DNA of 63,551 nucleotides, the filler included, from Octopus bimaculoides (lineage: Eukaryota), in assembly GCF_001194135.2 (NCBI RefSeq). It is 6 parts of 6 records of this genome, joined end to end, with 100 filler letters (N's around TTAATTAATTAA, not from the genome) between each part and the next. Parts side by side here need not be neighbours in the genome. Positions count along the whole stretch, not along the records: positions 29,007 to 51,026 come from NC_068988.1; 5 more parts are not named here. One strand, 5' to 3'. The notes under the pieces are model-generated. The model made no database searches. It was not told the origin of the DNA and worked only from the letters and a program-made list of their open reading frames with translations. Shown here in pieces: positions 40,085 through 50,536 of the stretch; the stretch's first letter is position 1; the number at the start of each line of letters is the position of its first letter. A program made the position numbers and the translations under genes.

Positions 40085-40733
40085 TCTAGTCATTAACAAG
40101 CAGAACGACCATGTGGCCAGCTTTGGGCAGGACATCTCTGAAGTCCACTACATGTCGACAACCAAGTACCTGGCTCTGCATCGTGGCTTTGAATGGTGAG
40201 AAGATGCCATTGGTGTGGTTTGCAACTGGTTGCAGGCTCAACACAGCCAACTACAGGGACATCTTGGCCACAAAAGTCCAGCCCTGGGTGAGAAAGATCA
40301 CAGAGAAGGTGGATTACATCTTTCAGCAGGGCAGTGCCCCAGCCCACACAGCCAAGAATAGCTGGAATGGAACATGAACTTCTGGTCACAGTACTTTTGG
40401 CCATCACAGTCATCCAACTGCAACTCCCTCGACTACAGCATGTTGAGCACAAGGCCTGCAAGTCCGTCACAGAAACGTCGATGAGCTGAAGTCCTCCATT
40501 AACTGTGTGTGGGCCAGCATGAGGAAGCATTTTGCCTGCAACATGTGCACGCCTTCAAGTCTCACCTGGAGTGCATGCTTGCCACCAAGGGTGGCCACAT
40601 TGATTAATATTAATATTTAAACACATACTTATATGTTAAAACAATAAAAACGTCTCTAACTGCATCAAAACTATCATTGTGTCCTTTGTTGAGAGCATCA
40701 TAACGAATGCAAGCGGACTTTTGCAAAGCCCAG
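40085..40733 (+). mobile_element. Second maT-like transposase 3' half, different subfamily
   Basis: MPLVWFATGCRLNTANYRDILATKVQPWVRK..YIFQQGSAPAHTAK, then after a frameshift FWPSQSSNCNSLDYS (degenerate WPPxSPDLNPLDY). Ends ...gcaaagcccag followed by TA. Confidence 0.8.
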
Positions 40734-48382: not shown

Positions 48383-50143
48383 ACACAAGTAGACAGTAGA
48401 CCGGTGGTTTTTCTGTGTTTGTGGAAGTTGGCTTGCTTCTATCAGGAAGCAGACGACTTTCTTTGAATCGTCTAGAATGATGTATGGTAGGAATTTGTAC
48501 AGCTTAGTATCTGAACTTTGTGATAGTAATATAATAGTACGGATTGTTGTTAAAGACTGAAATATTTTAGTTTTCGAAATGTCTTGACTCCATGAGAGGT
48601 TAATAAAATGTTATTTAAAACTATGATACTTAACATTTACTAGCAATGTGAAGTTATGTTATTTATAATACTATTACTAAGCTGTAGAAGATTTACTAAA
48701 GTTACATCAAAAACTAATACACCCGCAAACCTAAAAATGCCACAATATGGTGCTGGAATGTCCAAGAATGATCCCAAATTAAATTAAACAACCATGGTGT
48801 ATATTTTTATTTACTCGCCATTACTGTCCAATTCATTTCAAAACGACCACATTTTAAGAATTCCAGCTATCTAAAGATTATGATTATGGTCTTTGAGGTG
48901 TTTCAGTGATATCACAAAATTCATTTAATAAATCTTCGTCCTCAGAGAATGTTGCAAAAAAAAAAAAATCAAGCAATGTGGTGGGTATTAATTAGACGGG
49001 TGACATCTGTGATATACGGAAATATAATTAACGAAGCAGCAAAGTTAAATTTTCTTCCATTCAATAGCGCTGTATCCCAATATACAAAAGAAGTGAAAAT
49101 TACAGAAACTCGCTAAAATAGAATGCAATCACGTTGGCCTATTCCCAACTAAATTTTCAAAACATGTGTAAGAGACTGCTTTAAACGAGGAAGAATTTCT
49201 TTAAGAAATTCCTCAAATTTAAGCCGTCAATCTTTGAAGGATAAATCTCATAAATCTAATTAATTAATGGCTTTCTTTTTTTCCTTTTTATTAGTAGCGC
49301 CTAAAATATTTTTTTCAAATAATTAAAAGGTTATAAAGACAAGAATAATTTAAAATATTGCACCACTACATTCCTCTTGCATATGGTATGAAAGCATCTT
49401 TCGTATAAAGATAAGGAAAAATACCAAAGTAACAGAAACATATTGAAAAAATAGCAAAATCTAGTTCTCAATAAACTATATATATATATATATATTCCTT
49501 ATCAAATATTCTTTTCAAAAACGAAACAAAAATTTAAAAGACCAAAATCAAACACGAATAATTTCTTTTGTAAATTTGTTTATAAAAATTCATTTTTCAG
49601 TTTATGAATTAACATTTTTAACTTGACAGTATTTTTGATAAAAGATGTTTTGAAGAATATATTACACTTGAAATGTGTGTAGAAATATCGAGAAAATATT
49701 AACCAAGTCTAATTGAAAACATTTGAAAATGCGCGGAAACAATGGAAATGGATATTTTCAGTGTAGAATTCTTCACATAATTAAAAAAAAAAAAAGCACC
49801 GATAAAAGGTACAAAACAATATAAAAATCAGAAAGAAATTTCTCAAAAATGTCTCAAGATCGTAATTCAGAAGATTAATGTAATTCATTTAGACAGCGGT
49901 TGTTATTGTTTAGCCGAAGGTCAAGTCAGATCGGCTAGAGCTACGACCAAAGGCATTCCGGCCGTGACCATCACATCTGTTTAAGGGCGCATAAACTACA
50001 TCGTTTCCTTAATTAGACTGATGTAGAATGTCTAATGGTATAGATGATGATCGATATGTAATTTTAGAAAATAGTAAAGTTATTTACATTTTTATGCATG
50101 TGTAGCAGAGGCCAGGCGGAAGGAAGGGTAAAGATGTAAAAGT

Positions 50144-50359
50144 TCACTTTAACTCAGCTTTAAGTCGTTGAATGCACTTCATCACTGGCGCAGGATAGGT
50201 GCATCCATACACCTCTATATTGACATAACACATGGACAGGCAAACCAGGCGATCTTCGTCAAACTTATCATGATGTACTTTAAGGAACTTTCTTCGTAGA
50301 CCCCATTCGGTGCTGCTCTCAAAAGCATTTCGGTATTTCGAAATTTTTTTATCGGACAT
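50144..50359 (-). CDS. XTBD (XRN2-binding domain) protein, PAXT-1/CDKN2AIP/CDKN2AIPNL/NKRF family; 71 aa if unspliced, or first coding exon of a longer gene
   Basis: Translation MSDKKISKYRNAFESSTEWGLRRKFLKVHHDKFDEDRLVCLSMCYVNIEVYGCTYPAPVMKCIQRLKAELK* has the XTBD pattern R-x3-ES-x3-W-x2-R-x2-F, L-x2-LS-x3-N and GC-x-Y. No frameshift or internal stop. ATG at 50359 is in context CACAATG (A at -3). Ortholog identity is uncertain, so no symbol is given. Confidence 0.85.
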   Translation of the reverse strand: MSDKKISKYRNAFESSTEWGLRRKFLKVHHDKFDEDRLVCLSMCYVNIEVYGCTYPAPVMKCIQRLKAELK

Positions 50360-50526
50360 TGTGAGTTGATAAATTCGACAGAAAGATAGATATATATTAT
50401 ACAATATATATATATGTCTCTGTATATATATATGTATATATAGCTACGCACCCGTACGTGTATGTATATAATATATTTTATATATAAATGTTATTATAAC
50501 AAATTCTAAGTAATAAGATCGAGAAC

Positions 50527-50536
50527 GGGCGGAAGT
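50527..50536. promoter_or_regulatory. Overlapping GC-box/ETS motif GGGCGGAAGT, putative promoter element of the XTBD gene
   Basis: GGGCGG (Sp-like) fused to CGGAAGT (ETS-like) about 170 bp upstream of the XTBD ATG, in repeat-free sequence. Typical of housekeeping promoters; function is inferred. Confidence 0.35.

What the first reader, a model, noticed from the sequence alone, without database searches (positions are those of the whole stretch)
50144..50359. Possible stand-alone 71-aa XRN2-binding-domain microprotein
Seen: an intact ORF with the XTBD signature (ES..W..RRKF, LVCLSMCYVN, YGC53TY55) that stops immediately after the domain, in a 2-kb island almost free of repeats, with an Sp/ETS motif upstream. 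Established: XTBD proteins (C. elegans PAXT-1; human CDKN2AIP, CDKN2AIPNL, NKRF) bind and stabilise the 5'-3' exonuclease XRN2, and from memory the GCxY Cys/Tyr are the key contacts. Inference: if unspliced, this is a domain-only XRN2 regulator shorter than the family members I recall. Only weak donors (GA|gttaaa, AA|gtgaac) lie before the TGA, so splicing into a longer NKRF-like gene, or a recent nonsense mutation, cannot be excluded.
Basis: partly seen in the sequence, partly recalled or inferred. Interest (0 to 1): 0.75.

Follow-up and report, generated by a model that had tools for sequence, protein, structure and literature searches.

The report
Octopus 71-residue XRN2-binding-domain-only gene
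This is a real, intact 71-codon gene in an octopus genome that encodes only the small helical domain other animals use to bind the RNA-degrading enzyme XRN2. It is a cephalopod counterpart of the human mini-protein CDKN2AIPNL and not a broken or mis-read piece of the larger NKRF gene.

Summary
The ORF is confirmed on the minus strand at 50359..50144: ATG to TGA, 71 aa. It scores E = 2.2e-23 against Pfam XTBD. An AlphaFold model built from 61 aligned sequences has pLDDT 95.5 and superposes on the crystallised PAXT-1 XTBD bound to XRN2 (TM 0.86-0.90, rmsd 1.0-1.4 A). The two XRN2-contact residues are present as Cys53 and Tyr55.

It is not the missing first exon of NKRF.
- Octopus has a separate full-length NKRF with its own XTBD. 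That domain is about 51-54% identical to the ORF, with no DNA similarity.
- The NKRF coding sequence has no introns.
- No dsRBD, G-patch or R3H exon lies in the 21 kb downstream of the ORF.

A second, distant cephalopod carries both its own NKRF and an XTBD ORF of exactly 71 codons. That ORF aligns to this one without gaps and stops at the same codon. Its codon-position identities (0.60/0.79/0.39) are those of purifying selection, and it has no usable splice donor before its stop.

Best reading, confidence about 0.65: a conserved, domain-only XRN2 binder derived from an NKRF-type XTBD, working like CDKN2AIPNL or the PAXT-1 XTBD.

There is no transcript or protein evidence, so expression and splicing remain untested. 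It is a new member of a known kind, of moderate interest.

The parts
50144..50359 (-). Complete coding sequence of the 71-aa XTBD-only protein: ATG 50359-50357, TGA 50146-50144, 8.4 kDa, pI 9.2.
   Evidence: sequence. (Pfam XTBD, E = 2.2e-23). (pLDDT 95.5; TM 0.86-0.90 to 5FIR PAXT-1 XTBD). (mass and pI).
50195..50203 (-). Codons for Cys53-Thr54-Tyr55, the loop between helices 3 and 4. They are equivalent to PAXT-1 Cys54 and Tyr56, which are required for XRN2 binding.
   Evidence: alignment to 5FIR_B. (Tyr55 invariant in 61 XTBD sequences; Gly52 at 90% or more; Cys53 is the majority residue, with V, N, T, A or S in some homologues). PMC7054742 read (Cys54 and Tyr56 essential).
50526..50535 (.). 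Sp/ETS-like motif GGGCGGAAGT (ACTTCCGCCC on the gene strand), about 170 nt upstream of the ATG. Candidate core-promoter element.
   Evidence: sequence; the distant cephalopod homologue has ACTTCCGTTCTGACCGGAAGTG 50-75 nt upstream of its ATG. Promoter function is inferred, not tested.
50386..50442 (.). (AT)n microsatellite between the ETS-like motif and the ATG, in the putative 5' UTR or promoter.
50082..50090 (-). Best donor-like site near the ORF, AAT|GTAAAT (GT at 50087-50086). It lies about 57 nt AFTER the stop, so using it would not change the protein.
   Evidence: approximate PWM score 1.16; the homologue has a strong CAG|GTATGT 83 nt after its stop. Use of either site is untested.
49287..49292 (-). 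First canonical AATAAA downstream of the stop, 854 nt away. Candidate poly(A) signal.
   Evidence: Not tested.

Best explanation
The ORF is a genuine, conserved cephalopod gene. Its whole product is one XRN2-binding domain (XTBD) of 71 residues.

Shown here:
- The sequence is an XTBD.
- It is predicted with high confidence to form the same helical bundle as the PAXT-1 XTBD seen bound to XRN2 (DSSP helices 3-7, 16-29, 35-51 and 57-70).
- It carries the Cys/Tyr loop that contacts XRN2.
- It is a paralogue of the octopus NKRF XTBD, not part of that gene.
- A second cephalopod lineage keeps both genes and has the same 71-codon frame.

Inferred mechanism: the 8.4-kDa basic protein enters the nucleus and binds XRN2 one-to-one through the Cys53/Tyr55 surface. 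Because it lacks RNA-binding and G-patch modules, it cannot target XRN2 anywhere. It would therefore do one or both of two things:
- stabilise XRN2, as the PAXT-1 XTBD and human CDKN2AIPNL do;
- compete with NKRF for XRN2, and so tune how much XRN2 is drawn to nucleolar pre-rRNA.

Inferred origin: duplication of an NKRF-type XTBD before the two cephalopod lineages split, truncated right after the last helix.
For: Family and fold:
- Pfam XTBD E = 2.2e-23.
- AF2 pLDDT 95.5. The only significant PDB matches are the five PAXT-1 XTBD chains of 5FIR, TM 0.86-0.90 and rmsd 1.0-1.4 A over 65-68 residues.
- All invariant or near-invariant family columns are kept: R10, E14, W19, R22, F25, L38, C40, N47, G52, Y55, M60.

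Separate from NKRF:
- Octopus NKRF proteins of 646 and 653 aa carry their own XTBD.
- The O. bimaculoides NKRF CDS is one 1962-bp exon.
- It is 51-54% identical to the ORF, with no nucleotide similarity.
- tblastn with 151 XTBD homologues and with a 985-aa NKRF exon finds nothing else in 29007-51026.

Conservation:
- The contigs holding P0002 encode a 71-aa ORF under the standard code. It aligns gap-free, is 54% identical, begins MSD, shares CLSMC and EVYGCTYP, and stops at the same codon.
- Two of the same sequencing runs (ERR12374250, ERR14857104) also hold a cephalopod-type NKRF, P0165. It is collinear with and 46% identical to octopus NKRF.
- Codon-position identity is 0.60/0.79/0.39, dN = 0.37, dS saturated.
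- The ORF and P0002 pair in the NJ tree (87 of 200 bootstraps), outside the NKRF clade (194 of 200).

Donors: none before the stop is good in either species.

Public record: the exact 71-aa protein is a UniRef/MetaClust entry.

Functional precedent: CDKN2AIPNL, an XTBD-only protein, binds XRN2 and replaces PAXT-1 in C. elegans (PMC10511037). Cys54 and Tyr56 are essential (PMC7054742).
Against: - No RNA-seq, Iso-Seq, ribosome-profiling or peptide evidence could be consulted, so transcription, translation and the absence of splicing are untested.
- AAA|GTGAAC, in the last codon, scores about the same on a crude PWM (-0.33) as one donor proven real in another mollusc (0.79), so it is weak but not impossible.
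- Orthology of the ORF with P0002 rests on 71 columns and has only 44% bootstrap support. Pairwise identity to P0002 (54%) is barely above that to NKRF XTBDs (47-51%).
- The taxon of the P0002/P0165 runs is inferred, not read from metadata.
- About 1 kb of the 21 kb downstream is N, and cephalopod introns can exceed 21 kb.
- No close octopus orthologue (O. sinensis, O. vulgaris) could be retrieved to test the stop at short range. The word-indexed protein search proved insensitive.
Confidence: 0.65

Rival explanations
1. First coding exon of a longer gene. A weak donor in the last codons (AA|GTGAAC at 50147, or GA|GTTAAA at 50153) splices the XTBD onto downstream exons of a second NKRF- or CARF-like gene. 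Those exons would lie beyond 29007 or inside an N gap, and the TGA would be intronic.
For: - XTBDs normally sit at the N-terminus of longer proteins.
- In one mollusc the XTBD is split over small 5' exons, 5.5 kb upstream of the large NKRF exon.
- The Pfam match stops at model position 64 of 85.
- 1,026 N lie in the downstream 21 kb.
- The PWM score of AAA|GTGAAC (-0.33) is not far below one real donor (0.79).
Against: - Octopus already has a complete, intronless NKRF with its own XTBD.
- No homologous exon was found downstream.
- The distant cephalopod homologue stops at the same codon. Its only GT in the last codons is GGA|GTTTTT (score -9.1, different phase), so a shared donor does not exist.
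- Two independent intron read-throughs would stop at the same codon with P about 0.04.
- A public gene model ends at this stop.
Confidence: 0.12
2. The 71-aa ORF is translated but is not a stand-alone gene. It sits in the 5' exon of a longer, spliced or bicistronic-like transcript. The product is still the microprotein, but its expression is coupled to whatever lies downstream.
For: - In other lophotrochozoans the short XTBD ORF is physically linked to NKRF. An RNA contig carries a 76-aa XTBD ORF, a stop, then the NKRF body in one transcript.
- Elsewhere a 76-aa XTBD ORF lies 90 nt upstream of an intronless NKRF ORF.
- Donor-like sites lie shortly after the stop in the window (AAT|GTAAAT, +57 nt) and in the cephalopod homologue (CAG|GTATGT, +83 nt, score 5.7).
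Against: - No recognisable coding exon lies within 21 kb downstream.
- Octopus NKRF lies elsewhere, with no second XTBD within 10 kb upstream of it.
- A junction more than about 50 nt after a stop would normally trigger nonsense-mediated decay (general knowledge).
Confidence: 0.13
3. Non-functional relic. The ORF is the decaying 5' fragment of a duplicated or retrocopied NKRF gene that happens still to be open.
For: - It is intronless across a position where another mollusc has an intron, after YGC.
- There is no expression evidence.
- It is a singleton in the protein collection.
Against: - An open frame of 71 codons has P about 0.002 in this AT-rich DNA.
- All conserved XTBD positions are intact.
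- No nucleotide similarity to NKRF remains, so the copy is old. A homologue of identical length survives in a lineage whose NKRF is only 46% identical.
- The substitution pattern is that of a coding sequence.
Confidence: 0.07

Closest known systems
Human CDKN2AIPNL (C2AIL), XTBD-only protein
   Same: A small protein whose only domain is an XTBD. It forms a complex with XRN2 and can replace PAXT-1 in C. elegans to stabilise XRN2 (PMC10511037). This is the best functional analogue of the window's protein.
   Different: CDKN2AIPNL is longer: its XTBD is annotated at residues 25-113, against 71 residues in total here. It is a vertebrate relative of CDKN2AIP. The window's XTBD is closest to lophotrochozoan NKRF-type XTBDs, so the domain-only state probably arose independently. 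Orthology was not demonstrated.
C. elegans PAXT-1 XTBD (PDB 5FIR)
   Same: Same fold: TM 0.86-0.90, rmsd 1.0-1.4 A over essentially the whole protein. The Cys/Tyr contact loop is conserved. The crystallised fragment is about the same size (67-73 ordered residues) as the whole octopus protein.
   Different: Sequence identity is only 28-29%. In PAXT-1 the XTBD is the N-terminal part of a longer protein (Pfam places it at residues 7-87, PMC10511037). Here it is the entire product.
Octopus NF-kappa-B-repressing factor (XP_014768681.1 / A0A0L8IFX4; XP_029641382.1)
   Same: A paralogous N-terminal XTBD, 51-54% identical. It shares the cephalopod-typical CLSMCY and TYP motifs.
   Different: NKRF is 646-653 aa with dsRBD, G-patch and R3H domains, has GVTY in place of GCTY, and lies at another locus in a single coding exon. 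The window's gene has none of the RNA-binding or helicase-activating modules.
Short XTBD ORFs attached to NKRF in other lophotrochozoans
   Same: ORFs of 76 aa that end 0-5 residues after the last XTBD helix, at the same place as the octopus stop.
   Different: They arise differently: from a cassette exon with an in-frame stop inside the NKRF gene, or from a tandem duplicate 90 nt upstream of NKRF. In L019 the short ORF's closest relative is its own NKRF (61% identity), which points to an independent origin.

Membership tests
XTBD family (Pfam PF11952) | Sequence match to the XTBD profile above the curated threshold | tested here: met
   82.2 bits against a 27.6 cut-off, E = 2.2e-23, residues 6-69 on model positions 1-64 of 85. 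381 homologues at E <= 1e-3 in 1.8e9 representatives.
XTBD family (Pfam PF11952) | Helical XTBD fold as in PAXT-1 bound to XRN2 | tested here: met
   AF2 pLDDT 95.5, pTM 0.83. Foldseek against PDB: only the 5FIR PAXT-1 chains are significant, TM 0.86-0.90, rmsd 1.0-1.4 A. This is a prediction, not an experimental structure.
XTBD family (Pfam PF11952) | Conserved Cys and Tyr (PAXT-1 Cys54/Tyr56) needed for XRN2 binding | tested here: met
   Cys53 and Tyr55 align to them. Tyr55 is invariant in 61 sequences. Their requirement comes from PMC7054742.
XTBD family (Pfam PF11952) | Physical binding to XRN2 | not testable with these tools
   Needs pull-down, co-IP or a complex prediction with octopus XRN2.
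[quoted passage not shown] | XTBD joined to dsRBD, G-patch and R3H domains in one protein | tested here: not met
   The ORF stops after the XTBD. No such exon lies in 29007-51026. Octopus NKRF is a different, intronless gene with its own XTBD.
CDKN2AIPNL orthologue group | XTBD as the sole domain of a small protein | tested here: met
   71 aa, a single Pfam hit that covers the protein.
CDKN2AIPNL orthologue group | Descent from the CDKN2AIP/CDKN2AIPNL lineage | tested here: inconclusive
   The nearest relatives are NKRF-type XTBDs of molluscs and annelids. In the NJ tree a separate group of longer non-NKRF proteins falls outside, but those were not named and 71 columns resolve little. No vertebrate CDKN2AIPNL sequence was included.
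Expressed protein-coding gene | Transcript and translation evidence | not testable with these tools
   No octopus RNA data were reachable. The exact protein is not on record in the contig index, which also holds no transcript contigs of octopus NKRF. That absence is therefore uninformative.

The most novel reading that the evidence does not exclude
Domain-only XRN2 binders have been produced repeatedly and independently from NKRF in lophotrochozoans. Three routes were seen: a dispersed 71-codon gene kept since before the two cephalopod lineages split, a tandem 5' duplicate 90 nt upstream of NKRF, and a cassette exon that ends the frame right after the XTBD. All stop within a few residues of the last helix. 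This would point to a general, so far undescribed regulatory layer: a free XTBD acts as an endogenous competitor or chaperone that sets how much XRN2 is available to NKRF for pre-rRNA processing.
Probability: 0.3. Interest if true: 0.6.

Novelty: new member of a known kind. Interest (0 to 1): 0.4.

Why it matters
XRN2 is essential and has many roles, and its specificity comes from XTBD partners. The cellular role of the only known domain-only partner, CDKN2AIPNL, is still uncharacterised (PMC10511037).

A naturally minimal 71-residue XTBD protein, conserved between two distant cephalopod lineages and coexisting with NKRF, would show that the bare domain is selected for in its own right. It would give a compact reagent for XRN2 binding studies.

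Together with the short XTBD ORFs seen at NKRF loci of other invertebrates, it suggests that 'free XTBD versus targeting XTBD' is a recurrent regulatory arrangement.

It is also a small annotation lesson. The ORF should not be merged into NKRF, and its homologue in the protein collection is mis-translated to 139 aa with TGA read as Trp.

Tried and rejected
- Word-indexed protein search with the ORF, with an alignment of the ORF and P0002, and with an NKRF R3H segment. It returned only the query or nothing, and one run timed out. It missed sequences known to be in the collection, so its silence was not used as evidence.
- Exact-sequence look-ups of the 71-aa and 86-aa (TTG start) products found no contig.
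- A metagenome scan with back-translated motifs gave 557 pattern matches and no true relative.
- tblastn for downstream NKRF, CARF, dsRBD, G-patch or R3H exons in the piece gave only chance hits at E > 0.02, many on the wrong strand.
- Single-sequence AlphaFold was uninformative (pLDDT 56) and was replaced by the model built from the alignment.
- The bacterial promoter/terminator scan, Rfam and tRNA scans gave nothing relevant. A sub-threshold mir-297 hit is the AT/TG microsatellite.
- A literature search for the run and assembly accessions, to name the source organisms, found nothing. Richter et al. 2016 is not held.
- I considered whether the P0002 contigs are transcripts, which would have been expression evidence. 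I rejected this because all contig ends fall in homopolymer or (AT)n runs, as expected for assembly breaks.
- dN/dS as a number was not obtainable because dS is saturated.

Full report
**1. What is there**

On the minus strand, 50359..50144 is an ATG-to-TGA frame of 71 codons. The first in-frame ATG is the start, and an upstream in-frame stop bounds the frame.

- The product matches Pfam XTBD (PF11952) at E = 2.2e-23, 82 bits against a gathering score of 27.6.
- It matches the crystallised PAXT-1 XTBD (5FIR_B) at E = 2.5e-9.
- The Pfam alignment uses model positions 1-64 of 85, so by that yardstick the domain looks cut short.
- An AlphaFold2 model built on 61 aligned XTBDs is very confident (mean pLDDT 95.5). 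DSSP assigns helices at 3-7, 16-29, 35-51 and 57-70.
- Its only significant PDB neighbours are the five PAXT-1 XTBD chains of the XRN2 complex 5FIR, with TM 0.86-0.90 and rmsd 1.0-1.4 A over 65-68 residues. Those chains have only 67-73 ordered residues.
- So the ORF contains the entire structurally defined XRN2-binding unit.
- Cys53 and Tyr55 align with PAXT-1 Cys54 and Tyr56, which are required for XRN2 binding (PMC7054742). Tyr55 is invariant in the family alignment, and every invariant or near-invariant column is kept.

**2. Where the window comes from**

- The piece shares dispersed repeats (68-86% identity) with an Octopus bimaculoides chromosome segment.
- The exact 71-aa sequence is a singleton entry in UniRef/MetaClust.
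- So this is an octopod genome, and a public gene model already ends at this stop.

**3. Is it the first exon of NKRF?**

A full HMMER scan of 1.8e9 representative proteins found 381 homologues. The best are 52-58% identical, and the long ones are NKRF orthologues of Mytilus, Solemya and Capitella: XTBD plus dsRBD, G-patch and R3H.

Two of the hits are the octopus NKRF proteins themselves: O. vulgaris/sinensis XP_029641382 (646 aa) and O. bimaculoides XP_014768681 / A0A0L8IFX4 (653 aa).

- They begin with their own XTBD (MNIESFRNEVESDKEW...CLSMCYINHVSYGVTYP...). It is about 51-54% identical to the window's protein.
- The O. bimaculoides NKRF CDS is a single 1962-bp exon on CM046601.1.
- It shares no nucleotide similarity with the window's ORF.
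- tblastn with all 151 homologues, and with a 985-aa NKRF exon from another mollusc, found nothing else in 29007-51026 on either strand.

The ORF is therefore a distinct, old paralogue. It is not a mis-annotated NKRF exon, and there is no repeat here of the human NKRF annotation story in PMC7054742.

**4. Is the stop real and old?**

The closest short hit, P0002, is listed as 139 aa, but its contigs show that TGA had been read as Trp. Under the standard code the ORF is MSDRNF...DGVF-TGA, exactly 71 codons.

- It aligns to the window's protein without a gap, is 54% identical, has the same start (MSD), shares CLSMC and EVYGCTYP, and stops at the same codon.
- Two of its sequencing runs (ERR12374250, ERR14857104) also contain a full-length NKRF, P0165.
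- P0165 is collinear with and 46% identical to octopus NKRF. It clusters with octopus NKRF at 194 of 200 bootstraps.
- So a second, deeply diverged cephalopod has both genes. It is probably a decapodiform, but the taxon is inferred.
- Between the two short ORFs, nucleotide identity by codon position is 0.60/0.79/0.39, dN is 0.37 and dS is saturated. That is the signature of long-term coding constraint.
- In the NJ tree the two short proteins pair (87 of 200) outside the NKRF clade. The support is weak, as expected from 71 columns.

**5. Splicing**

These scores come from an approximate donor matrix with frequencies recalled from memory.

| Site | Position | Score |
|---|---|---|
| AAA\|GTGAAC (window) | last codon | -0.33 |
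| TGA\|GTTAAA (window) | near the stop | -8.1 |
| GAG\|GTGTAT (window) | middle of helix 3 | 0.7 |
| GGA\|GTTTTT (homologue) | only GT in the last codons, different phase | -9.1 |
| Two donors proven by a transcript in another mollusc | for comparison | 4.6 and 0.8 |

- XTBD homology continues to residue about 69 (RLKAEL against the family pattern QLKEL..L), so any bypass of the stop would have to use the last two or three codons.
- There is no donor shared by the two cephalopods there.
- Two independent intron read-throughs would end at the same codon with P about 0.04.
- Both species have a better donor-like site shortly after the stop: AAT|GTAAAT at +57 nt here and CAG|GTATGT at +83 nt in the homologue. 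Using them would not alter the protein.
- The first AATAAA is 854 nt downstream.

**6. Related arrangements elsewhere**

These bear on the origin of the gene.

(a) Locus L005, a mollusc-like contig. The NKRF XTBD exon ends ...YGC|GTCAGT, and the large NKRF exon (dsRBD, G-patch, R3H) lies 5.5 kb downstream.
- An RNA contig from SRR7949664 (L006) includes a 99-101-nt middle exon with proper acceptor and donor.
- That exon encodes SYPTQTMIQLQELIKELKGN followed by TAA, which gives a 76-aa XTBD-only ORF.
- Skipping it joins exon 1 to exon 3 in frame (…YGCRYPDSVHLQLKELTRDL…), giving full-length NKRF.

(b) Loci L019 and L020. A 76-aa XTBD ORF ends 90 nt upstream of an intronless 587-aa NKRF ORF that has its own XTBD. 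The two XTBDs are each other's closest relatives at 61%, which indicates a local tandem duplication.

(c) Loci L021 and L022. These encode a 99-aa XTBD protein with an acidic stretch and a KRKK tail, and no NKRF within 10 kb.

Short XTBD-only products are therefore recurrent, and they end at about the same place as the octopus protein.

**7. Mechanism**

Shown: an intact, conserved XTBD with the XRN2-contact residues and no other module.

Inferred from PAXT-1, CDKN2AIPNL, NKRF and CDKN2AIP biology (PMC10511037, PMC7054742):
- The 8.4-kDa basic protein (pI 9.2) binds one XRN2 molecule.
- It then either stabilises XRN2 or competes with NKRF's XTBD, modulating XRN2 recruitment to pre-rRNA.

Neither binding nor expression was testable here.

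**8. Verdict**

Rivals:
- spliced first exon of a longer gene: 0.12;
- microprotein ORF embedded in a longer transcript: 0.13;
- relic: 0.07.

The protein is a new member of a known kind: an XTBD-only XRN2 partner analogous to CDKN2AIPNL, probably derived independently from NKRF. No paper in the held library mentions XTBD proteins in molluscs or cephalopods. Interest is moderate.

Noticed in passing
L005 10001-10170 (exon 1), 14690-14790 (cassette exon), 15766 onward (large exon); RNA contig L006: In an unidentified mollusc-like genome, the NKRF gene has a 99-101-nt middle exon. It duplicates the C-terminal XTBD helix and carries an in-frame TAA. The RNA contig that includes it encodes a 76-aa XTBD-only ORF. 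Skipping it gives in-frame full-length NKRF. After the stop, the genome and RNA copies differ by a 2-nt indel; before it they are synonymous.
   Followed up: partly
L019 10001-10231 and 10321-12084; L020 6257-6487 and 6577-8340: A 76-aa XTBD-only ORF lies 90 nt upstream of an intronless 587-aa NKRF ORF that has its own XTBD. The two XTBDs are 61% identical, which indicates a tandem 5' duplication. Whether they share a transcript is unknown.
   Followed up: partly
L021 / L022 10001-10300: A 99-aa stand-alone XTBD protein (P0017) has an acidic run and a KRKK tail. No NKRF-like ORF lies within 10 kb on either side.
   Followed up: no
L017 10001-11962 (O. bimaculoides CM046601.1); L018 3001-4971 (Mizuhopecten yessoensis): The NKRF coding sequences of octopus and scallop are single exons, whereas the L005 species splits the XTBD with introns. 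NKRF gene structure therefore varies among molluscs.
   Followed up: partly
L001-L004 (Logan ERR12374250, ERR12408770, ERR12370320, ERR14857104): The collection's protein P0002 (139 aa) is an artefact of translating TGA as Trp. The real ORF is 71 codons. A strong donor-like CAG|GTATGT lies 83 nt after its stop, and a double ETS motif (ACTTCCGTTCTGACCGGAAGTG) lies 50-75 nt before its ATG.
   Followed up: partly
window about 40130-40500, + strand: A stop-interrupted frame reads ...YRDILATKVQPWVRKITEKVDYIFQQGSAPAHTAK.... It looks like the C-terminal part of a Tc1/mariner-type transposase, recognised from memory and not scanned against Pfam. The 145-aa ORF on the opposite strand (40093-40530) is probably its antisense shadow.
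   Followed up: no
window 35.9-36.5 kb, 44.5-44.9 kb and several short runs: Assembly gaps totalling 1,026 N lie in the 21 kb downstream of the ORF. An exon hidden there would have been missed.
   Followed up: no
window 50420-50488: A sub-threshold Rfam mir-297 match (29.6 bits against 90) coincides with the AT/TG microsatellite upstream of the ATG. It is almost certainly not a miRNA.
   Followed up: yes
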